The notes beneath the pieces were generated by a model, which was not told where the DNA came from, ran no database searches, and saw only the letters and a program-made list of their open reading frames with translations. The translations under genes and the position numbers were made by a program. DNA of 63,008 nt, counting the filler, from Octopus bimaculoides (taxonomy: Eukaryota): NCBI RefSeq assembly GCF_001194135.2. It is 5 parts of 4 records of this genome, joined end to end, with 100 filler letters (N's around TTAATTAATTAA, not from the genome) between each part and the next. Parts side by side here need not be neighbours in the genome. Positions count along the whole stretch, not along the records: positions 27,816 to 46,075 come from NC_069007.1; 4 more parts are not named here. One strand, written 5' to 3'. Below are positions 27,816 to 46,075 of the stretch, piece after piece; within the stretch, counting starts at the first letter, position 1, and every line of letters starts with the position of its first letter.

Positions 27816-27859
27816 GCTAGCGATTAATTAAAATAATATAAGTGAGATTGCAGCTGTGG

Positions 27860-28243
27860 TCGATACCAGTGTTGCATAATCAGCCCATTTAAAAGTAAGC
27901 TTGAATCGTTGGGTGATATGCTGTGCTTGAGAAGACCTGTTGAGCTAAGTGAAATCATAGTTGTGGTCAATGCCAGTGCCGTCTGACTGGCACCCATGCT
28001 AGTGGCACGTAATAAGCATCATTCAAACGTGGGTCAATGCGTGCTGCCTGACTGGCTCCCATACTGGTGGCACATTAAAAGCACCTACTACACTCTAGGA
28101 GTGGTTTGCGTTAGGAAGGGCATCCAGCTGTAGAAACCTTGCCAGATCAGATTGGAGCCTGAGGTAGCCTACTGGCTTGCCGGTCCTCAGTCAAATCATC
28201 CAACCCATGCCAGCATGGAAAACGGGCGTTAAACGATGATGAT
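27860..28243 (+). mobile_element. RTE-type 3'-end retroposon, family E, with (GAT)n tail
   Basis: Shares ...GGAAGGGCATCCAGCTGTAGAAAC...CCCATGCYAGCATGGAAA...AAACGATGATG with 28845-28990, 32860-33190, 40578-40850, 43430-43600, 46176-46882, 51963-52312, 54770-54950 and 55995-56056. Confidence 0.85.
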
Positions 28244-29140
28244 AATTTCTGAATCCCATAATTTACTGCAGGTAAGCAAAATCTGAATCCTTTATTGATA
28301 GAAAATCAGTAAAATATTATTACCATACATTTTTACTGCTCCAAATGGAAGTAGAGCAGACTACCAAAGTGCATTATTGTCTGTGTAGTGTTCCTATGGA
28401 ATTGGTCCTTTCAATTAGTTTCCAGGCATGTTTTATACTAGAAAATGTACTGAATGTTATGAATGTGGCAAACTTATTTTATTATGGCATGTGATGAAAT
28501 AGGAAGAAAATGTGTTGTCACATGTGATTAAACCACTTGATACCAACCTGCCTGAAACCACACCTAGTTCTTGATACAAACTTCTACTTTTAACGAGATC
28601 GAAATCTAAAGATTCCATCAAGATTTCATGTTCATTTATGTTCCAAACACCAGCTTAACACTTTCAGTTATTTTACAACTAAATTCTTCATTTTTTTCAA
28701 TCTTAATTGAAACAAAGGCAGTGTTGTGTATTTCATCAGAAATAGGGCAACAAAAGTGTGAAATAAAGGAAATAGAATTTTCAAATATAGAGAATTAAAG
28801 TTCATTAACATTTCAAATGTAATCATCTCATCTTTTTTTCAGACATCATCATCGTCGTTTAACGTCCGCTTTCCATGCTAGCATGGGTTGGACGATTTGA
28901 CTGAGGACTGGTGAAACCGGATGGCAACACCAGGCTCCAATCTGATTTGGCAGAGTTTCTACAGCTGGATGCCCTTCCTAACGCCAACCACTTATCCAAT
29001 GTGGCCTTCCTTAAGACAACATTTGATGGAGATTTGACAACTATTTCAAGCAGGTCATGCAACAACAAAGAGGTTCTGTCAATGCAGAAGGCCAAACAGA
29101 TAAAACAATAACAGCTTGTATAGAAAATTATGGGACTCAC

Positions 29141-29211
29141 CTTTTTTGAATGGCTTCTGAGACAAATTTCTGCAGTATATGACTGAGAAATGTGAAATAG
29201 TTTCGCCGTAA
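29141..29211 (-). CDS. TERT: TERT exon, start of RNA-binding region: (C)YGETISHFSVIYCRNLSQKPFKK
   Basis: Strong acceptor tttctctttttcaccttgtacag, donor AAG|gtgagt, phase 2 in and phase 1 out, in frame with the linker exon. IYCRNL resembles the FLY/ILYS motif that precedes the CP motif in TERTs. Confidence 0.65.
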
Positions 29212-29752
29212 CTGTACAAGGTGAAAAAGAGAAATTAAAATGTTATACCGAGGAAGGATTTAAGATTAAATTACATAATGGTAGAGTCATGACAGTTATA
29301 AAACTACTTATGCATTGTTATATATATATATTCACTTCCACTTTGTTATTTTTATTATTGTGTATATATTATACAGTAAAGTCTTTTACTGTACATTTCC
29401 AACTTAGTATCACATGCACTTATAAAACTGTTCATTGAATTAGTATGTAAGTGGCTGAGTACTACTACTTTTAATGTTCACTTCCCAGGGAACTACTTAG
29501 CCCTACCATTTTTACCATCTTCCTTTCCTTGCACCACATGACAAGATCAGGTGTGTTGATGGCAAAAAGTGGGAAGTGATATTTACCCTCAAGGTCCTCA
29601 GAGACCTCCCAAATCCCGACCTCTTTTGGATAAATTTCTCTTCCTTACAGTAAGCTGGCTTGCAATGTTTACCTTCTCTGTAAAACTTAATGTTTCCATG
29701 CTCCACTAAATTCAACATAAAAAAAACAAACAAAAAAATTCTTGTGTGTTAC

Positions 29753-30590
29753 CAGTAAGGATTGAACTTGAGATTCAACAGCGGACAGTGGGAAATAGTG
29801 CTTGAACGGTTCCTTTTGCCCCTCCTGGTTTTCTTGGTGGTCTTTGACACTTCACCATCATGATTATCAGCAATCACACCCAACAACCTCCAACCATCAA
29901 CTGTACTACTTGGCTGATCCAATGGGTTTCCGTTGCTATTCATATTGTTCGCATCACTCTTATTACAGCTGCCATTCTTACTAATGTTGCTATTGTTGCT
30001 ATCATTACCTTTGGCTATGCTCTTACTGCAATCACTACTGATATCATTGCTGCCTGTGTTGCTGTTGCTATTTCTGTTAGAAGTGATGCAACTACTAATA
30101 ACACCAGTGTTGTCAGTGGTATTGCTGTTGCTAATGCCAGCGACACAGCTGCTAACTGTATTAATAAGGCTAGTGGCATTGGTGCTGCTATAGTTGGTAG
30201 AAGTAACATTAGTTTTTGTACCAACATTGTTGTTGCAAACAGTGCTATCAGAGACATTGTTGCAAATGATATCAGTATCACTGGTGAAGCTGAAGTTGCA
30301 ATTGTTCTCAACATTAAAATTGTTGCTCAAGATATCACTCCTGCTGTTGACACTAGGGTTACTGATAGGAGTAACGTTGTCATTAGTTTTCTTACCATTA
30401 CCATCATTGTTGCTAATGTTTCTGGCACAGCTGTTGCTAATTTTGTCATTGTTGGAGCCAGTGCCCACTTTACTAACACCAGTATTGCTATCAACATTGT
30501 TGCTGTTATTAGTACTGGTGTTTTTGCAAATATTAACTATTTTAAAGTGTGTTTGAGAATTTAGAGGAATGAGATCATATATAGCTGTCC
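29753..30590 (-). CDS. TERT: TERT large exon: end of GQ motif (GTAIYDL) plus Asn/Ser/Thr-rich linker and basic KKTRRGKR motif
   Basis: 838-bp open frame, acceptor ctcttctattcag, donor CTG|gtaaca, phase 1 in and phase 2 out, matching both neighbouring exons. Confidence 0.78.
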
Positions 30591-31003
30591 CTGAATAGAA
30601 GAGGGGGTAGAAAAATAGAGAATGGAAAAAGTTAATTAAGTGAACCAACAATTTAAAAGTATTTCAACATTTTTATGACTATATTTCTAACAAAATACTC
30701 TTCTTATGTTTTAATTACTTTCAAAAGATATCTAGATGGATTCAATAAAGTAACTAACTTTTTTCATGTTCATCTAAAGCTTGGAAAATAACAAAATGTT
30801 CTTTCATAAAATTATGATGGCAACTTATAATTTAAAATTCAAATATTTTAAAACAGATAGTTTTTGTATTAAAAAAGAGTTAATTCTAAATTAAGGAATA
30901 TATCATATTTAGTTAAACATCTTTCAAAAAAGATTTTTTTTTTTAAATAACAGAGAGCAAACAATCACCTAAACATTTTTTTTTTAAATAAATTATTTAG
31001 AAT

Positions 31004-31204
31004 TATGAGGGTGAGTCAAAAAAATAATGCCATTTTGTTTAGGACAGGTATAATTACCAACGCAGGAACATGTATCTTACATCAAAATGAAGCTGGTCCT
31101 CTGTGGATCACATCCCTACTTCTCAACATAGTCACCGTTTCTCTCAATAGCAATGTTCCACCTTCGAATGAGAGCATGTATCCCTGCCCCGTAAAATTCT
31201 ATTG
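31004..31204 (-). mobile_element. Mariner transposase C-terminus and terminal repeat
   Basis: IEFYGAGIHALIRRWNIAIERNGDYVEK* matches the mariner C-terminal GIxxLxxRWxxxIxxxGDYVE motif. Confidence 0.8.
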
Positions 31205-32150
31205 NNNNNNNNNNNNNNNNNNNNNNNNNNNNNNNNNNNNNNNNNNNNNNNNNNNNNNNNNNNNNNNNNNNNNNNNNNNNNNNNNNNNNNNNNNNNNNNN
31301 NNNNNNNNNNNNNNNNNNNNNNNNNNNNNNNNNNNNNNNNNNNNNNNNNNNNNNNNNNNNNNNNNNNNNNNNNNNNNNNNNNNNNNNNNNNNNNNNNNNN
31401 NNNNNNNNNNNNNNNNNNNNNNNNNNNNNNNNNNNNNNNNNNNNNNNNNNNNNNNNNNNNNNNNNNNNNNNNNNNNNNNNNNNNNNNNNNNNNNNNNNNN
31501 NNNNNNNNNNNNNNNNNNNNNNNNNNNNNNNNNNNNNNNTTACGTGCCACCGGCATGAAGGCCAGTCAGGCGGTACTGGCAATGGCCACTCTCAAAATGG
31601 TGTATTTCATGTGCCACCCTCACAAGAGCCAGTCCAGGGGCACTGGCAATGATCTCGCTCGAAAGTCCTTACACATGCCACAGGCACAAGTGCCAGAAAG
31701 GCGACGCTGGGCACAGGTGCCATCACGATTTCGCTTTCGCTTGCCCCAATAGGTCTTCGCAAGCTGAGTTTCGTGTCCAATGAAGGAGACGTGTACATGC
31801 ATTTTTTGTTTGTGTCTATTCCCCATCACTGCTTGGCAACCAGTGTTAGTATGTTTATGTTCCCATAACTTAGCAGTTTGGTAAAAAGACCTTAGTAGAA
31901 TAAGGACTAGGCTTTAAAAAGCAATAACTACTGGAGTTGATTCATTTGACTAAGATTCTTTAAGGTGGTGCCCCAGCATGGCCACAGTTTAATGACTGAA
32001 ACGAGTAAAAGAATAAAACAATTATATGTTCCTCTGTAAATTTCTATTTCCATTTACTTTTACCACAATCACTCGCATCCACTCTCATATGATTCTGAAG
32101 GGAATTTGTCACTCACAAATGTCTTCTTTCTCAATCAAGTAAGGACTTAC

Positions 32151-32236
32151 CAGTCAATTGAATACAAGCAGATGGTTTAATTGTCATGAACAATGCATGC
32201 TGCCCTAATAAAATCAGCATCTTTTCAACACCAATT
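32151..32236 (-). CDS. TERT: TERT TEN/GQ exon: IGVEKMLILLGQHALFMTIKPSACIQLT(G)
   Basis: Acceptor tttatattctgcag, donor CTG|gtaagt. Aligns by eye to human TERT [29 protein letters not shown]. Confidence 0.88.
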
Positions 32237-32340
32237 CTGCAGAATATAAATACACACGCATAAATATATAAGTGTACTGTTTACTTGATGGTGGAATCAG
32301 AATAAAAGTACTCAAACCAGCAAGAGATAAGTTTCATTTA

Positions 32341-32450
32341 ATGCTAACAAGCCACATCTGGAGTCTGAAGAACAACAATATACCACACACCATCAAGTGG
32401 AGCATGGTGGAGAGATCTAGACCATAAATTATGGCCTCTAGCCTGGTAAG
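32341..32450 (+). mobile_element. Small Penelope-type GIY-YIG region relic inside a TERT intron
   Basis: LTSHIWSLKNNNIPHTIKWSMVERSRP resembles the LSKxIWxLKxxNxxYxIKWxI segment of PLE endonuclease domains. Confidence 0.5.
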
Positions 32451-32631
32451 TAAAGTTTCACTCATAAACTCACAATAACTCCAAAAGAGAGTCATGAGAA
32501 AGAAAATGAGAGAGAGAGACAATGAAACAGAGAAGGAGAGTGAATGAAAGGAAGATAAAAGGATAGAGGAAGAGAGGAAATAAAAAAAAAAGAAAAAGAG
32601 TCCATTGACCATCAAAAAGTTTATTACTTAC

Positions 32632-32747
32632 AAGTACAAAAGATGAGTCCAATTGGATGACTTGAGTTGGTTGACCATGAAATTGGGGAAGGAACAATCT
32701 ACACCGGTATGAACACTTGACTGAGCATTGGTGCTGTAACAAGTCGG
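32632..32747 (-). CDS. TERT: TERT TEN exon: PTCYSTNAQSSVHTGVDCSFPNFMVNQLKSSNWTHLLY(L)
   Basis: Acceptor ctttcctgtttctttgatag (alternative at 32733), donor CTT|gtaagt, phase 2 out. FPNFMVNQLKSSNWTHLL corresponds to human LPNTVTDALRGSGAWGLLL. Confidence 0.85.
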
Positions 32748-33453
32748 CTATCAAAGAAACAGGAAAGTCATTAGTTGAAACAGACACAAGAGAGGGTTAA
32801 TTAGTATTTAACATGATGTAGATAATTACCATTGAATTTCAACGAAAATATATTTCTGTTAGTACCGCCTGACTGGCCTTCGTAGGATTTTCGAGCGAGA
32901 TCGTTGCCAGTGCCCCTGGACTGGCTCTTGTGCGGCTGGCACATAAAATACACCATTTTGAGCGTGGCCGTTGCCAGTACCGCCTGACTGGCCTTCGTGC
33001 GGGTGACACGTAAAAGCACCCACTACACTCTCTGAGTGGTTGGCGTTAGTAAGGGCATCCAGCTGTAGAAACTCCACCAAATCAGATTGGAGCCTGGTGT
33101 AGCCATCTGGTTCCACCAGTCCTCAGTCAAATCGTCCAACCCATGCTAGCATGGAAAGCGGACGTTAAACGATGATGATGATGATGATGATTCAAAGTGT
33201 ATCTGGACAAATTTTTATCTGAAATACCAGATGAACCCACATCACAGCAGGAGGCACAAAGAGGAGCAGCTTCATCCAACTTGATACTTCACCAAAAACA
33301 GTGCAGAAAGGAGGCTCAAAAACACTGAAAGGTAGTGCTCCAGCATGGTCCCAGCCTCTAGCTGAACCCAGTAATAGATAAAAGAATATGAAGATTTGTT
33401 TGTATCCATGTGAGAAGTAAATCCTGATAACTGCAGTGCAGTAGCATTAATTA

Positions 33454-34182
33454 CTCTTTTACTTGTTTCAGTCATTTGACTGTGGCCATGCTGGAGCACC
33501 GCCTTTTAGTCGAGCTAATCGACCCCAGGACTTATTCTTTGTAAGCCTAGTACTTATTCTATCGGTCTCTTTTGCCGAGCCGCTAAGTTNNNNNNNNNNN
33601 NNNNNNNNNNNNNNNNNNNNNNNNNNNNNNNNNNNNNNNNNNNNNNNNNNNNNNNNNNNNNNNNNNNNNNNNNNNNNNNNNNNNNNNNNNNNNNNNNNNN
33701 NNNNNNNNNNNNNNNNNNNNNNNNNNNNNNNNNNNNNNNNNNNNNNNNNNNNNNNNNNNNNNNNNNNNNNNNNNNNNNNNNNNNNNNNNNNNNNNNNNNN
33801 NNNNNNNNNNNNNNNNNNNNNNNNNNNNNNNNNNNNNNNNNNNNNNNNNNNNNNNNNNNNNNNNNNNNNNNNNNNNNNNNNNNNNNNNNNNNNNNNNNNN
33901 NNNNNNNNNNNNNNNNNNNNNNNNNNNNNNNNNNNNNNNNNNNNNNNNNNNNNNNNNNNNNNNNNNNNNNNNNNNNNNNNNNNNNNNNNNNNNNNNNNNN
34001 NNNNNNNNNNNNNNNNNNNNNNNNNNNNNNNNNNNNNGACACACAAACATATACACACACACATATATATACGACGGGCTTCTTTCGGTTTCCGTCTACC
34101 AAATCCACTCATAGACACGCAGTGGGACTGAACCCGGAACCATGTGGTTGGTAAGCAAGCTACTTACCACACAGGCACTCCT
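33454..34182 (-). mobile_element. SINE family A, full-length copy spanning an N gap
   Basis: The two ends flank gap 33590-34037 and are colinear with 1-318. Confidence 0.85.
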
Positions 34183-34519
34183 ACGAAAATTTTCGAAAAT
34201 TTTCTGCATTTTTTTAGGGTTTTTTTTCATAGTGTATCATTTATATAAAAGTTAACAACAATAAAATTATTGACATATATACATACCTCTCTGAATCCGA
34301 GTGTGAGAACATTTTGTAGGCAGCTAGTCTGGTTTCTGAATTTCTGAAATAAGCAAAATAACAATAACAACAACCATATCTACTATAGGCACAAGGCCTA
34401 AAATTTGGGGGGAAGGGGCTAGGTGATTACATTGACCCCAGTGCTAAACTGGCACTTATCTTATCAAACCCATAAAGACGAAAGGCTAAGTCAATCTTGA
34501 CAGAATTTGAACTCAGAAT

Positions 34520-34842
34520 GTTGTTGTTGTTGGCACTCCGTCACTTACGACGTCGAGGGTTCCAGTTGATCCGATCAACGGAACAGCCTGCTCGTGAAAT
34601 TAACGTGCAAGTGGCTGAGCACTCCACAGACACGTGTACCCTTAACGTAGTTCTCAGGGGATATTCAGCGTGACAGTGTGACAAGGTTGACCCTTTGAAT
34701 TACAGCCACAACAGAAACAGGAAGTAAGAGCGAGAGAAAGTTGTGGTGGAAGAGTACAGCAGGGTTCGCCACCATCCCCTGCCAGAGCCGCTTTAGGTGT
34801 TTTCGCTCAATAAACACTCACAACGCCCGGTCTGGGAATCGA
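34520..34842 (-). mobile_element. tRNA-derived SINE family C (cut by gap), inserted in a family D copy
   Basis: Nearly identical to 45161-45538, with an (AAC)n tail. Confidence 0.85.
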
Positions 34843-37737
34843 NNNNNNNNNNNNNNNNNNNNNNNNNNNNNNNNNNNNNNNNNNNNNNNNNNNNNNNNNN
34901 NNNNNNNNNNNNNNNNNNNNNNNNNNNNNNNNNNNNNNNNNNNNNNNNNNNNNNNNNNNNNNNNNNNNNNNNNNNNNNNNNNNNNNNNNNNNNNNNNNNN
35001 NNNNNNNNNNNNNNNNNNNNNNNNNNNNNNNNNNNNNNNNNNNNNNNNNNNNNNNNNNNNNNNNNNNNNNNNNNNNNNNNNNNNNNNNNNNNNNNNNNNN
35101 NNNNNNNNNNNNNNNNNNNNNNNNNNNNNNNNNNNNNNNNNNNNNNNNNNNNNNNNNNNNNNNNNNNNNNNNNNNNNNNNNNNNNNNNNNNNNNNNNNNN
35201 NNNNNNNNNNNNNNNNNNNNNNNNNNNNNNNNNNNNNNNNNNNNNNNNNNNNNNNNNNNNNNNNNNNNNNNNNNNNNNNNNNNNNNNNNNNNNNNNNNNN
35301 NNNNNNNNNNNNNNNNNNNNNNNNNNNNNNNNNNNNNNNNNNNNNNNNNNNNNNNNNNNNNNNNNNNNNNNNNNNNNNNNNNNNNNNNNNNNNNNNNNNN
35401 NNNNNNNNNNNNNNNNNNNNNNNNNNNNNNNNNNNNNNNNNNNNNNNNNNNNNNNNNNNNNNNNNNNNNNNNNNNNNNNNNNNNNNNNNNNNNNNNNNNN
35501 NNNNNNNNNNNNNNNNNNNNNNNNNNNNNNNNNNNNNNNNNNNNNNNNNNNNNNNNNNNNNNNNNNNNNNNNNNNNNNNNNNNNNNNNNNNNNNNNNNNN
35601 NNNNNNNNNNNNNNNNNNNNNNNNNNNNNNNNNNNNNNNNNNNNNNNNNNNNNNNNNNNNNNNNNNNNNNNNNNNNNNNNNNNNNNNNNNNNNNNNNNNN
35701 NNNNNNNNNNNNNNNNNNNNNNNNNNNNNNNNNNNNNNNNNNNNNNNNNNNNNNNNNNNNNNATATATGTCTGTGTTTGTTCCCCCCAACATCACTTGAC
35801 AACCGATGCTAGTGTGTTTACATTCCCGTAACTTAGCGGTTCGGCAAAAGAGACCGATAGAATAAGCACTAGGCTTCCAAAGAATAAGTCCTGATAGTGG
35901 TGATGGTGATGATGCTGATAGAGATGATGACGATGACGGACAATTACACTGATGATGGCAATGACAATGGTAACAACAACAACAACAATGATAACGATGA
36001 GAAATAATTAGTGAAAGTCATTACGGCTATTAGATATAGAAGGACCTCATTCTGTGTAGACGCTTGACAATCAGACTGTAGCCACATCAGCCTTGAGCGA
36101 TCATATGGTGTAGCAACAAGTGTCTCCTCTAGGAAGGTTTCAAAACTGTAATAAGTAGGAACAACAAAAACTTATGAAAGTATATATATTACATCACATC
36201 AGATCATGCTTATCATTATTATTATTATTATTATTATTATTGAATGAGAGAGCAGTGCATGCCATCAAAGTGACACTGGGGTACAAATATACAAAGCCTA
36301 ATATACCCATCATGACTACCCGTCTGATAAGGGTACACCGGGCACATGCATCACAACCATGTGTGCGCGACATGGTGATCTCATATCAAGATAAACAGCA
36401 CATGACCTCGCAGGTGGGGCCCAGTTATAATTTTCTTCAGGTCGAGTAGCCCATCCTGCTCAAAAGGTCCCTGAATAAGGTTTGTTTAAGGATGTTGAGC
36501 AAAACACCCATGTTTCCAAAGGTGAATTANNNNNNNNNNNNNNNNNNNNNNNNNNNNNNNNNNNNNNNNNNNNNNNNNNNNNNNNNNNNNNNNNNNNNNN
36601 NNNNNNNNNNNNNNNNNNNNNNNNNNNNNNNNNNNNNNNNNNNNNNNNNNNNNNNNNNNNNNNNNNNNNNNNNNNNNNNNNNNNNNNNNNNNNNNNNNNN
36701 NNNNNNNNNNNNNNNNNNNNNNNNNNNNNNNNNNNNNNNNNNNNNNNNNNNNNNNNNNNNNNNNNNNNNNNNNNNNNNNNNNNNNNNNNNNNNNNNNNNN
36801 NNNNNNNNNNNNNNNNNNNNNNNNNNNNNNNNNNNNNNNNNNNNNNNNNNNNNNNNNNNNNNNNNNNNNNNNNNNNNNNNNNNNNNNNNNNNNNNNNNNN
36901 NNNNNNNNNNNNNNNNNNNNNNNNNNNNNNNNNNNNNNNNNNNNNNNNNNNNNNNNNNNNNNNNNNNNNNNNNNNNNNNNNNNNNNNNNNNNNNNNNNNN
37001 NNNNNNNNNNNNNNNNNNNNNNNNNNNNNNNNNNNNNNNNNNNNNATTATTATTATTATTATTTTTTCATGGGTGATTTTCCATGCTTACATGAGTTGGT
37101 CAGGTCTTATTCAAGATAGCATCCAATTGACATTTGCTGTAGTTTCTTATCAATTCTGCTTTTATTATTATAATTAATAATAATAATAAAGGAGTTACGA
37201 CGCAAAAACGTATATAATTAAATGAACAAATTTATCTTCTTCAATATATATTTCAGTATAAAGAATTCATTAAGAGACTTAATAAATCAAAATTCCTTTA
37301 CACATCTTCAGGAAAAATAAATTAGCTTACCAATTATTTTTGTTGGTAGTTAATTTACAATATAATTAATAATAATAATGATGATGACTTCAAATTTTGA
37401 CACAAGGACAGTAATTTTAGGGGTGATTGTAAGTCGATTACATTGACCCCAGCGTCCAACTGGTACTTGTTTTATTGACCCCAAAAGGATGAAAGACAAA
37501 GTCAATCTCAGTGGCATTTGAACTCAGAATGTGAAGATGGACAAACTGCAAATTTTCATACAAGGCCAGCAACTGTAGGAGAGGGGTGGCTAGTCAATTA
37601 CATTGACCCTAGTACATGACTGGTACTTTATTTTATCAACCATGAAAAAGTGAAAGGCAAAATCAACCTGAACAGAATTTCAACAGAACGTTGAGATAAA
37701 ACAAAATACTTAGTTGCATGTTGTCCAGCATGCTAGC

Positions 37738-37783
37738 ACAATGTTTCGACTGATATACCCTCCTCCAGCCTTCATCAGGTGTC
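37738..37783 (-). ncRNA. Minimal type I hammerhead-ribozyme-like motif (probably inactivated), in a Penelope-type terminal fragment
   Basis: Minus strand reads GACAC CTGATGA A GGCTG [13 nt] CAGTC GAAAC AT T GTG: both core boxes, a 5-bp stem II and a 3-bp stem I. Confidence 0.5.
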
Positions 37784-39838
37784 TTGGGGAAATTTCGAAC
37801 CTGGGTTCTCATTCCTAAGGTATTTTTCAATGTCATTATTATTATTATTATCCAGGTCTCATAATTAACTATTTCAGTGAAATCAGACAATTTGTTAAAA
37901 AAATTCACTTTATTTTTGTTCTTCATGTTCAGTGTGTTAAAAGTGTATGAATTAAAGATTTTTTTATTAATTTTATTTTAATTCCTCTTGAATCCCACTC
38001 ATTTGTACACGACAGCATTTTTTCAGTTTGCCCAGGATCATTTTCTCTTCCTCCTCCCACAGGATGCAGCGATAGTTCAGCTAAACTTAAAGAATGCATT
38101 CAATTCGCAGTGCAGGGAGATAACTCCTGAAATGCTTCAAAATGTGTTNNNNNNNNNNNNNNNNNNNNNNNNNNNNNNNNNNNNNNNNNNNNNNNNNNNN
38201 NNNNNNNNNNNNNNNNNNNNNNNNNNNNNNNNNNNNNNNNNNNNNNNNCTTGTGGATTTTCCGAATGCCTCCCCCACCATTGCTCTCCGAACATTTTTGT
38301 TTTCAGATTCGTTTTGTACACCTTTTTCTTTTTACACCTGTTGCACTAGTTTTTTTTTTCAATTTCGTTTCCAGGTAACAATGTCAACATTAACTACAAA
38401 TTAGTTTCCATGTGCGTGACAGCACGTCAACTGTAAACACATGAAATCGTATTACTAATAATACAGAATTTTCGATGTCAGTCTTGTTTTCTTCATACGT
38501 TTATATAGTAGCAGACTGGGTCTAACAATATTGGTTGCCAGGAGACTAAGGTTAATACTGATTGCCAGGAGACCACGGTTAATATTGATTGCCAGTTATA
38601 TTGATATAACTTAACACCAGATAAATAGTATTATTCACCCTCACAACCTTATATTATTTTTTATGTAGGGGATAAAAAACAAAATTTAGATCTCTTCAGA
38701 TTTTTTTGAAAAGAAAAATTATCAAATTTGATATTAGTGTGGGGAAAAAATTGACATGGAATCCAACAGATAAAAGAATATTAACACCAGTACCTGTCGC
38801 CTGATTGTGTTACAAAGTTTAATAGTTTTTGGCTATCTCACTCCCATTAAAAAATTGGACTATCTCCCCCAACTAAAAAAATTGTTTAACCCTAAATAAA
38901 ACAAAGAATAATGAAAAATTAATAAAAACAAAAGTGGAAAGATTACGCATCTTATTGAATCTGATAATACTTTTATAACAAATCTCTCAGCTACATTTTG
39001 TTCTCTAAAAAGGTACGTGTCTATTTTTTCTATAAGCGTATCACAATGACTTATTCCATACTTCTGCACTTAGCTTTTATCTTCACTTTTCTTAAATTGG
39101 ATACGTTTGCTATTAAGTTGCAGAACTTTGGCAGTACAGTTACAAATCATTTCTGTTTTACTTCTTACATACAATTTCCAGTAAACTCTTACAGCTTCAT
39201 TTTTTGGTGATGATTGAAATATCAAACATTTTCTAACTGTTAAAGCAATTCTTAACATCAACTTCTTGATGCCTCTTCTATTTTTTCCTAGCCCCCATAC
39301 TTACCGTTTTCTGCGAAGATATTTTGGAAAGACTTCCCCACCACATTTTCTCCCAAATATATTTATTAAAAAATTTTTTTTTTTTTTTTGCCAAAAATCT
39401 CCGTTTTCGGATACAGAGGTTATATTTTCATAGGTCTAAAACTCAAAATGCACAGTGTCTCCACCTACCTGAAGTATGATCTTTGGATCCATACAGTGTC
39501 TCCATCTAGCTGATCAATCGATTGTACATTCCAATATTCAGGGTTTAATTGTAACCAGTCATACTGTTATAAGCAGAGTAATGTAGATAACTTAAAGAAA
39601 CAACATGCCTGTTGCCAGGTTTGTTAGTGCCAAGAAGAATATTTAGCTATAAATAATACCTTAGATAACTGAAGTTTCCAATATTTTGTTATTTTAGGTG
39701 GGTCATAAACGGGCTTGTTCAAGAATTGGCTGGAGCTACTCAGCCATGGGCTTTTGTATATAGTTGTTTACCTCATTTGATAATTTTTTAAAAACTGTTT
39801 TTGTTTTTTCATTTTCTAGTATCTTCCAGTAAAGAAAT

Positions 39839-39922
39839 ATGGCTACTGAAAAAATTACTGATGAAAATTTGAATGGTGATATTTACAGTATTGTAAAATT
39901 AATTAATGAAACTCCAGATAAA
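39839..39922 (+). CDS. Ankyrin-repeat protein, first coding exon MATEKITDENLNGDIYSIVKLINETPDK
   Basis: In-frame stop just upstream of the ATG, donor AAA|gtaagt, phase 0. GDxxxIVKLI continues into the next exon as an ankyrin repeat. Confidence 0.65.
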
Positions 39923-40199
39923 GTAAGTTGTTCCCTTTATTGGCTTCTCAAAGTCGACTGTTTATTATTTTACACACAGTATTAAATGTTCCTAAGTAAC
40001 CACATTTATTTTCTCACAATATTTCATGTCTTTTTCATTTCTTTCCTCTAATTAGCACCATTTTCATTTTTAGCAAACACTTAACCAAACCTCAAGACAT
40101 AATATTGACAGGAAATATCTAGTCCAAGTGTACGCATGCATGCACGCACGCACGCACACACACACACGTCCATTTCATATATCTTCTTTCAATTTCTGC

Positions 40200-40547
40200 T
40201 CTTTGCAAATAAAATTTTTTACGGATACAACTGCTTACAAAAATAGGGATTAAAGTATAATTTCTTTCTGTGTTCATAATTAAATCAATGTTTTAATGAT
40301 TAGAGAGAGATCCAATAGAATAGCTCTCAGAAACAGACAATGTACAAATTCGTTCTTCACAACTCCTGAAGCTGTTTTCTGACAAGGAGCGGGGAGTCAG
40401 GAAATTTTCAAACAACTGGAGGCCTCAATTGAAACAGAGGACCCAATATGATAAGGTTGAGAAACGCTGTTATAGATTATACCTAACTGAAAAAGATCAC
40501 GGCCACATCATCCAAACAGACCGGGTGAAACCGGGCTTAGCTGCTAG
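40200..40547 (+). mobile_element. Helitron-like 3' terminus
   Basis: CCGGGTGAAACCGGG hairpin followed by CTAG|T. The 5' limit is not defined. Confidence 0.45.
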
Positions 40548-40577
40548 TATAAATATATATATATGTACGTATATATA

Positions 40578-40996
40578 TCATCATCATCATCGTTTAACGT
40601 CTGTTTTCCATGCTAGCATGGGTTGGATGGTTTGACTGGGGTCTGGGAAGCCAGAAGGCTGCACCAGGCTCCAGNNNNNNNNNNGACTGGGGTCTGGGAA
40701 GCCAGAAGGCTGCACCAGGCTCCAGTCTGATCTGACAGTGTTTCTACAGCTGGATGCCCTTCCTAATGCCAACCACTCCGTGAGTGTAGCGGGTGCTTTT
40801 TACATGCCACCGGCATGGGCCAGAGGAGGCTGGCAACGGCCACGATCGGTTGGTGCTTTCTCCAGGTCCCCAAAAGCTAAGTATAGGGGTTTATCTTTAG
40901 CTAGGTATTTCTCCTGCAGTTGTCAAACCAGGAATATAGCATCAGTGGTGCTTCTACCTGGCACAAAACTGAACTGCATCTCATCTAAGCAGACTC
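40578..40996 (-). mobile_element. Internally deleted RTE LINE: RT fragment fused to the family E 3' end
   Basis: LDEMQFSFVPGRSTTDAIFLV..LQEKYLAKDKPLYLAFGDLEKA is followed directly by the 3' UTR and (GAT)n tail. Confidence 0.8.
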
Positions 40997-41795
40997 NNNN
41001 NNNNNNNNNNNNNNNNNNNNNNNNNNNNNNNNNNNNNNNNNNNNNNNNNNNNNNNNNNNNNNNNNNNNNNNNNNNNNNNNNNNNNNNNNNNNNNNNNNNN
41101 NNNNNNNNNNNNNNNNNNNNNNNNNNNNNNNNNNNNNNNNNNNNNNNNNNNNNNNNNNNNNNNNNNNNNNNNNNNNNNNNNNNNNNNNNNNNNNNNNNNN
41201 NNNNNNNNNNNNNNNNNNNNNNNNNNNNNNNNNNNNNNNNNNNNNNNNNNNNNNNNNNNNNNNNNNNNNNNNNNNNNNNNNNNNNNNNNNNNNNNNNNNN
41301 NNNNNNNNNNNNNNNNNNNNNNNNNNNNNNNNNNNNNNNNNNNNNNNNNNNNNNNNNNNNNNNNNNNNNNNNNNNNNNNNNNNNNNNNNNNNNNNNNNNN
41401 NNNNNNNNNNNNNNNNNNNNNNNNNNNNNNNNNNNNNNNNNNNNNNNNNNNNNNNNNNNNNNNNNNNNNNNNNNNNNNNNNNNNNNNNNNNNNNNNNNNN
41501 NNNNNNNNNNNNNNNNNNNNNNNNNNNNNNNNNNNNNNNNNNNNNNNNNNNNNNNNNNNNNNNNNNNNNNNNNNNNNNNNNNNNNNNNNNNNNNNNNNNN
41601 NNNNNNNNNNNNNNNNNNNNNNNNNNNNNNNNNNNNNNNNNNNNNNNNNNNNNNNNNNNNNNNNNNNNNNNNNNNNNNNNNNNNNNNNNNNNNNNNNNNN
41701 NNNNNNNNNNNNNNNNNNNNNNNNNNNNNNNNNNNNNNNNNNNNNNNNNNNNNNNNNNNNNNNNNNNNNNNNNNNNNNNNNNNNNNNNNNNNNNN

Positions 41796-42049
41796 ACGGG
41801 GACATAAACACACCAGCATCGGTTGTCAAGCAATGCTAGGGGGGACAAACACAGACACACACACACATATATATATATATATACATATATTCGATGGGCT
41901 TCTTTCAGTTTCCGTCTACCAAATCCACTCACAAGGCTTTGGTCGACCCGAGGCTATAGTAGAAGACACTTGCCCAAGGTGCCACGCAGTGGGACTGAAC
42001 CCGGGACCATGTGGTTGGTTAGCAAGCTACTTACCACACAGCCACTCCT
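41796..42049 (-). mobile_element. SINE family A copy
   Basis: Colinear with 1-318 and with the copy at 33454-34182. Confidence 0.85.
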
Positions 42050-42599
42050 GCGCCTAGATATATATATATATATATATATACTTGCACACACTCCTATACA
42101 TAAGTTCCCTGACTCATCTAGGAGGATAGTAACTCTAAATAAGTGAAAAATCAGACTGAAGCAACCCCATCAACATATGTGCATGTGTCTGTAAGTGTAT
42201 TTATATATTCATTTTTCTTCCTTATCCTTATTCTCTTTCATAAACCTCTTTTCTTACCCATGCATCTCTCCCCCTTTAATGTACTTCATATGCTTTTTTA
42301 GGAAAGTGGGTTATACATCATTAGACGTACACCTAACTTTCCTATATTAAATTAGAAGTGAACTGAACGCAGAAACTCCAAACTGATCAACAACAACAAA
42401 TATTTATTGGATGGTGGAAAATAAAACAGCTTCCAATTGTCCGGTTTTAGAGTAGCCTGAAATGTAGATGTACGGTTCCTCGAGCTGGTGTCGTTGTAGA
42501 GACAACTTGGTTCAACCACACTCAAATGGGAGAGCTTGCTTAGACATCTTGCTTGGTCGCTGTCAGGCTTGGTAAAGAGAAAGAATAATAGCGGGAACG

Positions 42600-42700
42600 C
42601 TTCGATGTTGAAACCCACGCATGCGTGGTTAAGGATTCAGCAATGGTGACTATGCCTTTTTGGCGCCAACATGACGTCACTACACCTTCATCTTCTTCAT
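42600..42700. promoter_or_regulatory. CpG-rich promoter-like cluster of palindromic sites
   Basis: CCACGCATGCGTGG (NRF1-like, 42615-42628), TTGGCGCCAA (E2F-like, 42660-42669) and TGACGTCA (CRE, 42672-42679) within 65 bp. Confidence 0.5.
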
Positions 42701-42705
42701 TTCAG

Positions 42706-42857
42706 GTTCACATGACTTCTGAGTCTGGTAAAACTTACTTGATGGCTGCGTGTGAACAGGGCAGCATGGATTTAGTAAAATTGCTGATAAAAGCTAAAGC
42801 TTTTTTGGACGTTACCGACAAGTCTGGTAAAGCTGCTTTGCATTATGCTATGGAATG
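42706..42857 (+). CDS. Ankyrin-repeat protein exon VHMTSESGKTYLMAACEQGSMDLVKLLIKAKAFLDVTDKSGKAALHYAME(C)
   Basis: Clear ankyrin consensus. Acceptor tcttcttcatttcag, donor ATG|gtaagt, phase 0 in and phase 2 out. Confidence 0.9.
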
Positions 42858-43899
42858 GTAAGTTCAAAATGAACTAAAATCTTCAGATCTGTTTTGTCTC
42901 TAAATTTCTTACAATTTCAGACAGGTTTGATATCCAAAGATGACATACTAGTGGCAGTGTGATTGAATGACTCTATGATATAGGAACCAGCAGCATCATT
43001 TTCTTATTTTCTCCATAAATCCTCTTTGTTATTGAATCAGAGAATCCTTTTTGGTGATCTGTTGTCAAATCAGATTATTTGTGTTTTGGATATATTCTTT
43101 GAGAGTCAACATTTCTTGTGATTGACCCAATGTAATTTGATGTTCTTTGTTCATATTATGGGGTAAAGATTCAATTTTTCTTGAAAGAAAATGTTATCTC
43201 AGCTCCAAAATGAGAAAGATTCTATGGTTTCTTTTGACAGTAATAATCTGTAAACTTTCTCCCAGAGATTATAAGGAACAATATCAGAAAATCTAACCTC
43301 TCTGTCATAAGGGGTCACAAGGAGGGGCCACACCCCCAGACACTACCTCTCCCACAACAACAACATACAAAACACATATTGTCTAAACCAATATCCCATC
43401 AACGCCAAACAGACAGCATCCAGCTATCATCATCATCATCATCATCGTCGTCGTTTAACGTCTGCTTTCCATGCTAGCATGGGTTGGATGATTTGACTGA
43501 GGACTGGTGAACCAGATGGCTACACCAGGCTCCAATCTGATTTGGCAGAGTTTGTACAGCTGGATACCCTTCCTAACGCCAACCACTCCGAGAGTGTAGC
43601 AAAAAGACAGACGAAATACTGGTAAACATTTCGCCCGGCGTGATACCGTTTCTGCCAACTCGCCCCAGCTATGTTTTCAAACAAATGTACATGAGATAAC
43701 CTGCACTTGTTCGGATAAATACATTGTATTGACTAAGCGATAGCTTTATGTCAGAGTAAAAGAACATCTTCACGAGGCCACAACACCCAGCGCCGTATTC
43801 TTACACTACCAAGATGGGGAATTCTTGACCCAGATACTGGCTAGGGGAATAGATGCGGTGAGCTTTCAAATAAAGAAGGCACATTTCACCATGGCTGTC

Positions 43900-44276
43900 A
43901 GACAATTTCTGTGACCACATAACCCCTAACATCTGGCCACCTAACTCCCCAGACTGTAACCTCCTTGATTATTATGTGTTTGGTTCAGTTGAGCAAGAAA
44001 CCAACAGAAATTCTTATAATGCTAAAGATGAACTAAAGGCAAGGATTATGACAGCATTCACCAACTTAAACAAGGAGACTATCCAGAAGAGTTGCAGGAG
44101 ATTCCAAAGTCGTCTGGAGGCTGTGGTTGAAGCCAATGTTGATTTTATTGAATAAATTTACTCTTTAGTATTTCAAGATATTTTTATGTAATTTTGGTAA
44201 AAATATCTTAAAATGAGATGTCAGTGTTATTTTCATTTTTGTGTACTTTAGGCGACAATTTATTCCCCACGCCCTG
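43900..44276 (+). mobile_element. Tc1/mariner (maT-like) transposase C-terminus with 3' terminal repeat
   Basis: IWPPNSPDCNLLDYYVFG...RFQSRLEAVVEANVDFIE*; ends CCCTG|TA. Confidence 0.85.
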
Positions 44277-44332
44277 TATGCATAATATATATATGCATAT
44301 ATATATGTACACATGCACACACACATGCATGC

Positions 44333-44365
<33 letters not shown>

Positions 44366-44466
44366 TATGCAGGGCAGGGAATCGTCAATTAGTAATAAAA
44401 TTAATAATTAACAATTTTGCCGGGTAGCTCAGTATGAAAAAACCTTTTCGGTAAAAAACATTTATA

Positions 44467-44698
44467 ATCATAAATATATAGGGATTGACAGTAACCTGCT
44501 TCTCCAACATACTGAGAATTCAGAAATAGCAGTCAAAGAACTACTGATTTCAAAACTACAAATTATTACTCCAGATTGAAATATCGCTATCAATCTGGAG
44601 TAATAATTTGTAGTTTTGAAATCAGTAGTTCTTTGACTGCTATTTCTGAATTCTCAGTATGTTGGAGAAGCAGGTTACTGTCAATCGCTATATATTTA

Positions 44699-44702
<4 letters not shown>
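44467..44702. repeat. Near-perfect inverted repeat with 113-bp arms and a 10-nt loop
   Basis: 44467-44579 equals the reverse complement of 44590-44702 except for one mismatch. Confidence 0.97.
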
Positions 44703-44743
<41 letters not shown>

Positions 44744-44919
44744 GACACATATGCATACACAAACATATACATACACTCACACACATACATATACATACAC
44801 GAATGCACACACACATACATATATTTTTGTATGTTCCATTCTTAAGAATTGAATATGTGTGATGTGTGTATGCTTAATATAATAATTATGTTAATGTCTC
44901 TGATGTTTATATTTTTTAG

Positions 44920-45082
44920 TCAATTCAATCAACAAGATATAGTGGCTCTCTTGATCACCAGTGGAGCCTGCATCAACATTCAAAACTTGGATGGCAACAC
45001 TCCTCTCCATGTGGCTGTGGAGAGAGGCAGTGAAGATTTGGTGAAAGTTATATTAAACAAAAAGGGAAAACATACCATACGG
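44920..45082 (+). CDS. Ankyrin-repeat protein exon QFNQQDIVALLITSGACINIQNLDGNTPLHVAVERGSEDLVKVILNKKGKHTIR
   Basis: GNTPLHVAV ankyrin motif. Acceptor tttatattttttag, donor CGG|gttagt, phase 2 in matches the previous exon. Confidence 0.9.
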
Positions 45083-45129
45083 GTTAGTGAATATATAGAC
45101 ATGTGTTGTGTGTGTATTTGTATGTGATG

Positions 45130-45160
<31 letters not shown>

Positions 45161-45170
<10 letters not shown>

Positions 45171-45538
45171 TGGCACTCCGTCGCTTACGACGTCGAAGGA
45201 TCCAGTTGATCCGATCAACGGAACAGCCTGCTCGTGAAATTAACGTGCAAGTGGCTGAGCACTCCACAGACACGTGTACCCTTAACGTAGTTCTCGGGGA
45301 TATTCAGCGTGACAAGGCTGACCCTTTGAATTACAGGCACAACAGAAACAGGAAGAAAGAGTGAGAGAAAGTTGTGGTGAAAGAATACAGCAGGGTTCGC
45401 CACCATCCCCTGCCGGAGCCTCGTGGAGCTTCTAGGTGTTTTCGCTTAATAAACACTCACAACGCCCGGTCTGGGAATCGAAACCGCGATCCTATGACCG
45501 CGAGTTCGCTGCCCTAACCACTGGGCCATTGCACCTCC
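45161..45538 (-). mobile_element. tRNA-derived SINE family C, full length
   Basis: Head with A box TGGCCCAGTGG and B box GGTTTCGATTCC, (AAC)n tail. Copies at 34520 and 60935. Confidence 0.9.
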
Positions 45539-45768
45539 ACATATAACAAGTGAAAGGAAGTTAAACCTCTTTATCAGATTTCAACATTCTTCTGCCTGGC
45601 GGCAAATTCAAATGTACATACAAAAAGAGAGGGAAATAGAAGTGATTATTTCTGTGCATGTTGAAAAATAGAAGCTTTAATGAAACATCTATAATTCACC
45701 TTAAACAAATAGAAGCTGTTATTTATATACCTGTCTTCGTCTTTTTTCTTTCTGTAAATTCCAACCAC

Positions 45769-45809
<41 letters not shown>

Positions 45810-46075
45810 AGTAAAAATAAATACAAAAAAAGGTGGATTTTTTTGTATGATTGTGTATAGAGGAATATATTATTTTGCTTAAAAGAGTTCCAACACTGTC
45901 TGTTTTTTATGTTTTATTTATATTCCTGCAGAACTAATGTGGGGTATAGAATATGGAATATACAATATATAATATAATATACAATATATAATATAAAATA
46001 AAATAAAAATGGATGGCACCATGAAATAAAGTATTGAATGTAGATGAAATATTGAGTGTTCAATATAAAGGATCA

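What the first reader, a model, noticed from the sequence alone, without database searches (positions are those of the whole stretch)
29141..32747. Cephalopod telomerase reverse transcriptase N-terminal half reconstructed from four exons
Seen: four GT-AG exons with matching phases giving ...SFPNFMVNQLKSSNWTHLLYLIGVEKMLILLGQHALFMTIKPSACIQLTGTAIYDL-linker-YGETISHFSVIYCRNLSQKPFKK, about 370 aa. Established: this follows the TERT GQ motif pattern PN...W..LL..IG...M..LL...ALF......C.Q..G..IY.L. Only the linker appears in the ORF track, where it looks like low-complexity noise. Relevant to telomere biology in short-lived, senescing octopuses.
Basis: partly seen in the sequence, partly recalled or inferred. 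Interest (0 to 1): 0.85.

Follow-up and report, generated by a model that had tools for sequence, protein, structure and literature searches.

The report
Octopus telomerase gene, N-terminal exons

Summary
The peptide is the C-terminal two thirds of the TERT TEN domain (GQ motif), the low-complexity TEN-TRBD linker, and the conserved motif that follows the linker in other TERTs. The assembly gap 31205-31539 lies inside the intron between exons B and C, so it does not touch the reading frame.

The finding is already known. The window is 100% identical to Octopus bimaculoides CM046627.1. The same joined peptide is in UniProt A0A0L8FS20, RefSeq XP_052833155.1 and GenBank QNC69519.1, all named telomerase reverse transcriptase. 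"N-terminal half" overstates it: the peptide is residues 41-410 of 1254. Two further TEN exons lie upstream, outside the finding (36145-36025, 34343-34287).

Three side results are minor:
- All public O. bimaculoides models lack about 41-46 N-terminal residues. The missing exon probably sits in the gap 36530-37045.
- The linker turns over quickly between octopus species.
- The TEN domain evolves fast (dN/dS 0.78 against O. vulgaris).

No link to octopus senescence is shown.

The parts
36025..36145 (-). Upstream TEN-domain exon (1 nt + FETFLEETLVATPYDRSRLMWLQSDCQASTQNEVLLYLIA), outside the finding's coordinates. The start codon used by the public models, ATG 36087-36085, lies inside it.
   Evidence: tblastn of P0001 and P0004 at 100% identity. 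Acceptor ttacag| and donor |gtaatg read. Aligns to hTERT from residue 47.
34287..34343 (-). Upstream TEN-domain exon (KFRNQTSCLQNVLTLGFRE; holds the invariant N51 and G56).
   Evidence: Same length and 91% nucleotide identity in O. vulgaris.
32632..32747 (-).
   Evidence: Orthologue at L001 16717-16832 with the same length.
32151..32236 (-).
30591..32150 (-). Intron between exons B and C. It contains the assembly gap 31205-31539, a mariner-like transposase C-terminal remnant (about 31120-31204, minus strand) and a SINE (31540-31790).
   Evidence: No coding match in the orthologous gap-free O. vulgaris intron.
29753..30590 (-).
   Evidence: Retained as coding in XP_052833155.1 and QNC69519.1. 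In-frame indels and dN/dS 0.53 against a third octopod.
29141..29211 (-).
   Evidence: Motif comparison with P0013, P0014, P0016, P0018 and P0025. 90% nucleotide identity to O. vulgaris.
36530..37045 (.). Assembly gap immediately upstream of the first readable TERT exon. It is the probable hiding place of the missing 5' coding exon(s), about 41-46 aa.
   Evidence: Inference. The O. vulgaris exon at L001 9914-10026 has no counterpart in readable O. bimaculoides sequence.

Best explanation
The region holds coding exons of the single-copy-looking telomerase reverse transcriptase (TERT) gene of Octopus bimaculoides, on the minus strand.
- most of the TEN domain, which in characterised telomerases anchors the DNA primer and supports repeat-addition processivity;
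- a long, Asn/Ser-rich, presumably disordered linker;
- the conserved motif that comes right after the linker in other TERTs, before the RNA-binding domain (TRBD).

The TRBD, reverse-transcriptase and C-terminal domains are encoded further downstream, beyond the low-coordinate edge of the piece.

Shown here: exon structure, identity with the annotated protein, TEN homology by sequence and by fold, and orthology with O. vulgaris. Inferred from the family: the molecular role. Not shown: transcription, splicing and activity.
For: - Exons and phases.
- The window is 100% identical to O. bimaculoides CM046627.1, including its gaps.
- The identical peptide is in A0A0L8FS20 (430 aa), XP_052833155.1 (1254 aa) and QNC69519.1 (1254 aa). 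QNC69519.1 carries 2 substitutions, one of them inside this peptide, which suggests an independent sequence.
- Pfam hits on the gene products are TEN_TERT, Telomerase_RBD, RVT_1 and TERT_C.
- PDB sequence searches return only TERT: E=0.005 for the single sequence, 8.9e-21 for the profile, 3e-109 for the full length.
- The AlphaFold2 model has pLDDT 79 and pTM 0.74. Its Foldseek hits 1-13 are all TERT TEN domains: human TMq 0.71-0.72, Tetrahymena 2B2A 0.62.
- 51 library proteins match the TEN query at E<=1e-3, and the long ones read are TERT-sized.
- The orthologous O. vulgaris gene has the same exon lengths and acceptors.
Against: - No transcript evidence could be examined directly.
- dN/dS of the TEN exons against O. 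vulgaris is high (0.78), so constraint is weak.
- The first ~41-46 residues of the TEN domain are not found in the assembly.
- The O. vulgaris gene model splices out its low-complexity linker, so the full 838-nt exon C may not always be retained in mRNA.
Confidence: 0.97

Rival explanations
1. The gene is TERT, but part of the low-complexity stretch of exon C is removed by splicing (an intron inside the ORF). The real protein would then have a much shorter linker than the 370-aa reconstruction implies.
For: - The O. vulgaris model (P0003) removes about 575 nt of its linker with a GT...AG pair, AA|GTCTGC ... AATAG|CAACGG.
- The acceptor sequence AATAG|CAACGGAAA is conserved in the window.
- The low-complexity sequence is open in other frames and on the other strand too, so openness by itself proves little.
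Against: - Both full-length O. bimaculoides records keep the linker, and one of them differs at 2 residues and so looks like an independent sequence.
- The O. vulgaris donor region is absent from O. bimaculoides.
- Indels against a third octopod are 15, 6 and 51 nt, all multiples of three, and dN/dS is 0.53.
- The O. vulgaris repeat has a 60-bp period, a multiple of three, and is open in the TERT frame.
Confidence: 0.15
2. The locus is a decaying or non-functional TERT copy (a pseudogene in the making), in keeping with fast protein evolution and the missing N-terminus.
For: - TEN dN/dS is 0.78, with only about 62% amino-acid identity between two congeneric species at dS 0.30.
- No start exon was found.
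Against: - No stop or frameshift occurs in any exon.
- Splice sites and exon lengths are conserved.
- All 12 invariant TEN positions are kept.
- The full-length product has intact TRBD, RT and CTE regions that match human TERT at 3e-109.
- The missing exon is present in O. vulgaris, and its absence here coincides with an assembly gap.
Confidence: 0.03
3. The RT-related sequence belongs to a Penelope-like or other retroelement rather than to telomerase.
For: Penelope-like elements are abundant in invertebrate genomes, and their RTs are the closest relatives of TERT (PMC8557442, listed).
Against: - Every sequence and fold match of the window-encoded part was to a TERT TEN domain, none to a retroelement protein.
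- The locus has many introns.
- It has a positional orthologue in O. vulgaris.
Confidence: 0

Closest known systems
Octopus bimaculoides telomerase reverse transcriptase (RefSeq XP_052833155.1; GenBank QNC69519.1; UniProt A0A0L8FS20 and A0A0L8FR88)
   Same: It is the same gene. The 370-aa peptide is residues 41-410 of XP_052833155.1 and is 100% identical. The window DNA is 100% identical to the record that carries the gene.
   Different: Nothing in the finding's range differs. A0A0L8FS20 extends 19 aa further upstream (FETFLEETLVATPYDRSRL) than the 1254-aa models. Those models start at an internal Met that is not conserved in O. vulgaris.
Octopus vulgaris 'telomerase reverse transcriptase-like' (P0003, on OX597840.1)
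   Same: It is the positional orthologue. Exon lengths and acceptor sites are identical for all six exons, with 74-91% nucleotide identity.
   Different: - Its model skips the two upstream TEN exons and starts at a Met inside a further 5' exon.
- Its linker holds a 60-bp minisatellite (8.7 copies) that encodes Ser/Pro/Leu/Met repeats, not Asn/Ser, and the model splices that repeat out.
- Amino-acid identity in the TEN domain is only about 62%.
Human TERT TEN domain (PDB 7QXA, 7TRD) and Tetrahymena TEN (PDB 2B2A)
   Same: Same domain by profile (E=8.9e-21 and 7e-6) and by predicted fold (TMq 0.71 and 0.62). The GQ-motif residues are conserved.
   Different: - Identity is about 26% to human and 18% to Tetrahymena.
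- The octopus sequence available starts at the equivalent of hTERT residue 47.
- The linker is about 283 aa and Asn/Ser-rich.
- Linker lengths of roughly 58-395 aa occur among the invertebrate TERTs read here, by my count, so the length is not unusual.

Membership tests
Telomerase reverse transcriptase (TERT) | TEN domain with GQ motif, recognised by sequence profile | tested here: met
   Profile A1 against the PDB: hTERT 47-179 at E=8.9e-21, 2B2A at 7e-6, and all 6 hits are TERT. Pfam PF11474 is recorded on P0001 and P0003. The invariant residues are kept.
Telomerase reverse transcriptase (TERT) | TEN fold | tested here: met
   AlphaFold2 model with pLDDT 79 and pTM 0.74. The Foldseek top 13 PDB matches are all TERT N-terminal domains. 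The model lacks the first ~46 residues of the domain.
Telomerase reverse transcriptase (TERT) | Complete TEN N-terminus (the conserved 'iL..LY..v.tL..w' segment) and a start codon | tested here: not met
   This segment is absent from the readable window and from L005. The O. vulgaris orthologue has it at L001 9914-10026 (HMM E=1.5e-5). The shortfall is best explained by the assembly gap 36530-37045 and is not evidence against membership.
Telomerase reverse transcriptase (TERT) | TRBD (Telomerase_RBD), RT motifs and C-terminal extension in the same gene | tested here: met
   These lie outside the window but in the same gene model: PF12009, PF00078 and PF21399 on P0004. P0004 residues 597-1253 match hTERT 456-1131 at E=1.6e-104. 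The O. vulgaris locus carries collinear exons for residues 411-1194.
Telomerase reverse transcriptase (TERT) | Exons actually spliced together in mRNA | not testable with these tools
   No RNA-seq was accessible. The only support is indirect: a RefSeq model and a separately deposited GenBank protein with 2 substitutions. The Logan contigs L002-L004 run on past the exon-C donor into sequence resembling this window's intron, so they are genomic or unspliced.
Telomerase reverse transcriptase (TERT) | Telomere-repeat synthesis with a telomerase RNA | not testable with these tools
   This needs a biochemical assay.

The most novel reading that the evidence does not exclude
Octopus TERT may be under unusually weak or shifting constraint.
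- The TEN domain evolves at dN/dS of about 0.8 between two Octopus species.
- The TEN-TRBD linker is replaced wholesale between species: Asn/Ser-rich in O. bimaculoides and a third octopod, and a 60-bp coding minisatellite in O. vulgaris.
- All public O. bimaculoides models are N-terminally truncated because an exon is hidden in an assembly gap.

If the fast evolution reflects relaxed or adaptive selection on telomerase in short-lived animals that breed only once, it would bear on telomere biology in cephalopods.
Probability: 0.15. Interest if true: 0.35.

Novelty: already known. Interest (0 to 1): 0.08.

Why it matters
As a finding it matters little.

The practical value lies in the corrections:
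- Anyone who uses the public O. bimaculoides TERT, for example for telomerase reconstitution or phylogeny, should know that it very probably lacks about 41-46 N-terminal residues plus 19 residues upstream of the annotated Met.
- The O. vulgaris model skips two TEN exons and its linker repeat.

Tried and rejected
1. **Search for the missing 5' exon in the window.**
   - A scan of the minus strand 36145-40200 for ATG...GT exons in the right phase gave one candidate, 39258-39173 (MLRIALTVRKCLIFQSSPKNEAVRVYWK), with no TEN-like motif. I rejected it.
   - blastn and tblastx against the O. vulgaris upstream region returned only interspersed repeats.
   - An HMM of homologue N-termini found the exon in O. 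vulgaris but nothing in the window.
   - tblastn and blastn-short of that exon against the window and L005 found nothing.
2. **Filling the gaps from the chromosome-level assembly.** I fetched it (L005), but it carries the same scaffolds and the same N runs.
3. **Transcript evidence from the Logan contigs L002-L004.** They run past the exon-C donor into intron-like sequence, so they are genomic or unspliced. Their species could not be identified.
4. **Literature.** I found no paper in the held library on cephalopod TERT. The source of QNC69519.1 was not found.
5. **Rfam scan of the piece.** No family reached its gathering score.
6. **Penelope-like or other RT origin.** Rejected on the TEN-specific hits.
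Full report
**Observation.** The piece 27816-46075 was read and translated in six frames. The exon bounds were fixed from the splice signals:
- A: 32747-32632 (116 nt)
- B: 32236-32151 (86 nt)
- C: 30590-29753 (838 nt)
- D: 29211-29141 (71 nt)

Each exon is preceded by AG and followed by GT(A/G)A. The split codons close correctly (TT+A = Leu, G+GG = Gly, TG+T = Cys). Only exon C is long enough to appear as an ORF (29749-30651, minus strand, 300 aa).

**The assembly gap.** N 31205-31539 lies inside the intron between exons B and C, so no reading frame has to cross it. Three results say that no exon is lost in the gap.
- The O. vulgaris orthologous locus (L001) has no N and shows no TERT-coding match between its exon B and exon C.
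- The alignments to human TERT and to a 13-sequence TEN profile are uninterrupted across the junction.
- The annotated O. bimaculoides proteins read straight through it.

The left flank of the gap encodes, on the minus strand, IEFYGAGIHALIRRWNIAIERNGDYVEK*. This matches only the extreme C-termini of SETMAR/Hsmar1 and Mos1 mariner transposases (E 0.04-0.4). The right flank is an octopus SINE. The gap therefore sits in nested repeats.

**What it is.**
- A search of 5.8 billion proteins returned a 430-aa protein with 100% identity over 100% of the query (P0001, Pfam PF11474 TEN_TERT). It also returned the O. vulgaris 'telomerase reverse transcriptase-like' protein.
- The cluster of P0001 contains UniProt A0A0L8FS20, RefSeq XP_052833155.1 and GenBank QNC69519.1. 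The last two are 1254 aa, and all are named telomerase reverse transcriptase [Octopus bimaculoides]. The 370 aa are residues 41-410 of the 1254-aa protein.
- The locus that encodes XP_052833155.1 (L005, CM046627.1 of GCA_001194135.2) is 100% identical to the window over all seven blocks and has the same gaps. The window is this very record.

Independent tests agree.
- The 91 non-linker residues hit only human TERT in the PDB (E=0.005, hTERT 117-178).
- An exhaustive HMMER search with the 139-aa TEN region found 51 proteins at E<=1e-3. The long ones read are TERT-sized.
- A profile of the octopus TEN region with 12 of these hits human TERT 47-179 at E=8.9e-21, Tetrahymena TEN (2B2A) at 7e-6, and nothing that is not TERT.
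- An AlphaFold2 model (pLDDT 79, pTM 0.74) has TERT TEN domains as its best 13 Foldseek matches (human TMq 0.71-0.72, 2B2A 0.62).
- The full-length product matches human TERT at 3e-109 through TRBD, RT and CTE.

Exon D (…SVIYCRNLSQKPFKK) carries the motif (I/M)(L/F)Y(S/C)(K/R)xL…P, which follows the linker in other invertebrate TERTs. From memory it resembles the human …HFLYSS… segment at the start of the TRBD; I did not test that resemblance.

**Anatomy beyond the finding.** Two more TEN exons lie upstream: 36145-36025 (FETFLEE…LLYLIA) and 34343-34287 (KFRNQ…GFRE). The remaining TERT exons lie beyond the low-coordinate edge of the piece. An ankyrin-repeat gene runs head-to-head on the plus strand from about 39839.

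**Linker.** Within exon C, 199 residues (30525-29929) are 25% Asn and 21% Ser, with no strong tandem periodicity.
- A third octopod, of unidentified species (Logan contigs L002-L004, genomic), has a homologous Asn/Ser-rich linker. Its indels are 15, 6 and 51 nt, all in frame, and dN/dS is 0.53.
- O. vulgaris has a 60-bp minisatellite at the same place (8.7 copies). It is open in the TERT frame and encodes Ser/Pro/Leu/Met repeats, and its gene model removes it as a GT…AG intron.
- Whether O. bimaculoides ever splices inside exon C cannot be decided here. Both full-length records keep it.
- By my count, linkers of roughly 58-395 aa occur among the invertebrate TERTs read here, so the length is ordinary and only the composition is notable.

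**Missing N-terminus.**
- The 1254-aa models start at Met 36087, but the frame is open and conserved up to the acceptor at 36145/36146. That Met is Thr in O. vulgaris.
- Homologues carry 35-65 more residues and hTERT carries 46 more.
- An HMM of those N-termini finds the exon in O. vulgaris at L001 9914-10026 (DIELLNQIYEEVKSLKTWLTEVFGPDSCVMKKLLENASD, E=1.5e-5). It ends in the phase that the FETF exon needs.
- It has no counterpart in readable O. bimaculoides sequence.
- The adjacent block 36229-36529 matches L001 10741-11040, which places the expected exon in or just beyond the gap 36530-37045. This placement is inference.

**Rate.** Between O. bimaculoides and O. vulgaris, the TEN exons have dS 0.30 and dN 0.23, giving dN/dS 0.78 over 143 codons. 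The linker tail plus exon D gives 0.59. This is fast for a catalytic subunit, but all invariant residues are kept.

**Verdict.** The finding is real and correctly interpreted, but it is already annotated, so its novelty is 'already known'. The senescence angle has no support in the sequence. A review in the library attributes octopus post-reproductive death to optic-gland signalling (PMC8166319), and no paper on cephalopod TERT was found.

Noticed in passing
window 36025-37045 (minus strand); L001 9914-10026: All public O. bimaculoides TERT models start at an internal Met (36087), which is Thr in O. vulgaris. About 19 aa upstream in the same exon, plus an exon of about 41 aa that is present in O. 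vulgaris (DIELLNQIYEEVKSLKTWL...LLENASD), are missing from the models. The missing exon is probably hidden in the assembly gap 36530-37045.
   Followed up: partly
window 29929-30525 (minus strand); L001 23027-23546; L002 about 280-1010: The TEN-TRBD linker turns over between octopus species. O. bimaculoides and an unidentified third octopod have an Asn/Ser-rich block (in-frame indels, dN/dS 0.53). O. vulgaris has a 60-bp coding minisatellite, which its gene model splices out. O. bimaculoides also lacks a ~70-90-aa segment (…KARLTADQSLEPDLTNTG… in O. vulgaris) that the other two species keep between IYDL and the repeat.
   Followed up: partly
window exons 36144-30540 against L001 12298-22822: The TEN domain evolves fast. 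dN/dS is 0.78 (dS 0.30) and amino-acid identity is about 62% between two Octopus species, while neighbouring introns are 80-94% identical at the nucleotide level.
   Followed up: partly
window 31120-31204 (minus strand) and 31540-31790: The assembly gap 31205-31539 is flanked on one side by the C-terminal end of a mariner-like transposase ORF (weak but exclusive matches to SETMAR and Mos1 C-termini) and on the other by an octopus SINE copy. The gap probably hides the rest of the mariner element.
   Followed up: partly
window about 39839-46075 (plus strand): An ankyrin-repeat gene lies head-to-head with TERT. Its exons are visible at 42625-42861 and 44849-45127. This leaves at most about 3.7 kb (616 nt of it N) for the TERT promoter and 5' exon(s). 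In the O. vulgaris locus the gene called upstream is different (faint IFT122 hit), which I did not look into.
   Followed up: no
window 27961-28259, 28835-28993, 32890-33191, 40548-40873, 43426-43599, and 33425-33589, 35763-35893, 41796-42072: The piece is dense with interspersed repeats. At least two SINE-like families have dozens of copies in the 62-kb O. vulgaris locus, and several of the N gaps abut them. No Rfam family reached its threshold.
   Followed up: no
L001 10001-52157 and 54821-62157: The O. vulgaris annotation splits TERT into two gene models (a 634-aa N-terminal part and a separate TERT_C part). It also skips the two TEN exons at L001 12297-12417 and 13291-13347, which are intact and conserved.
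   Followed up: partly
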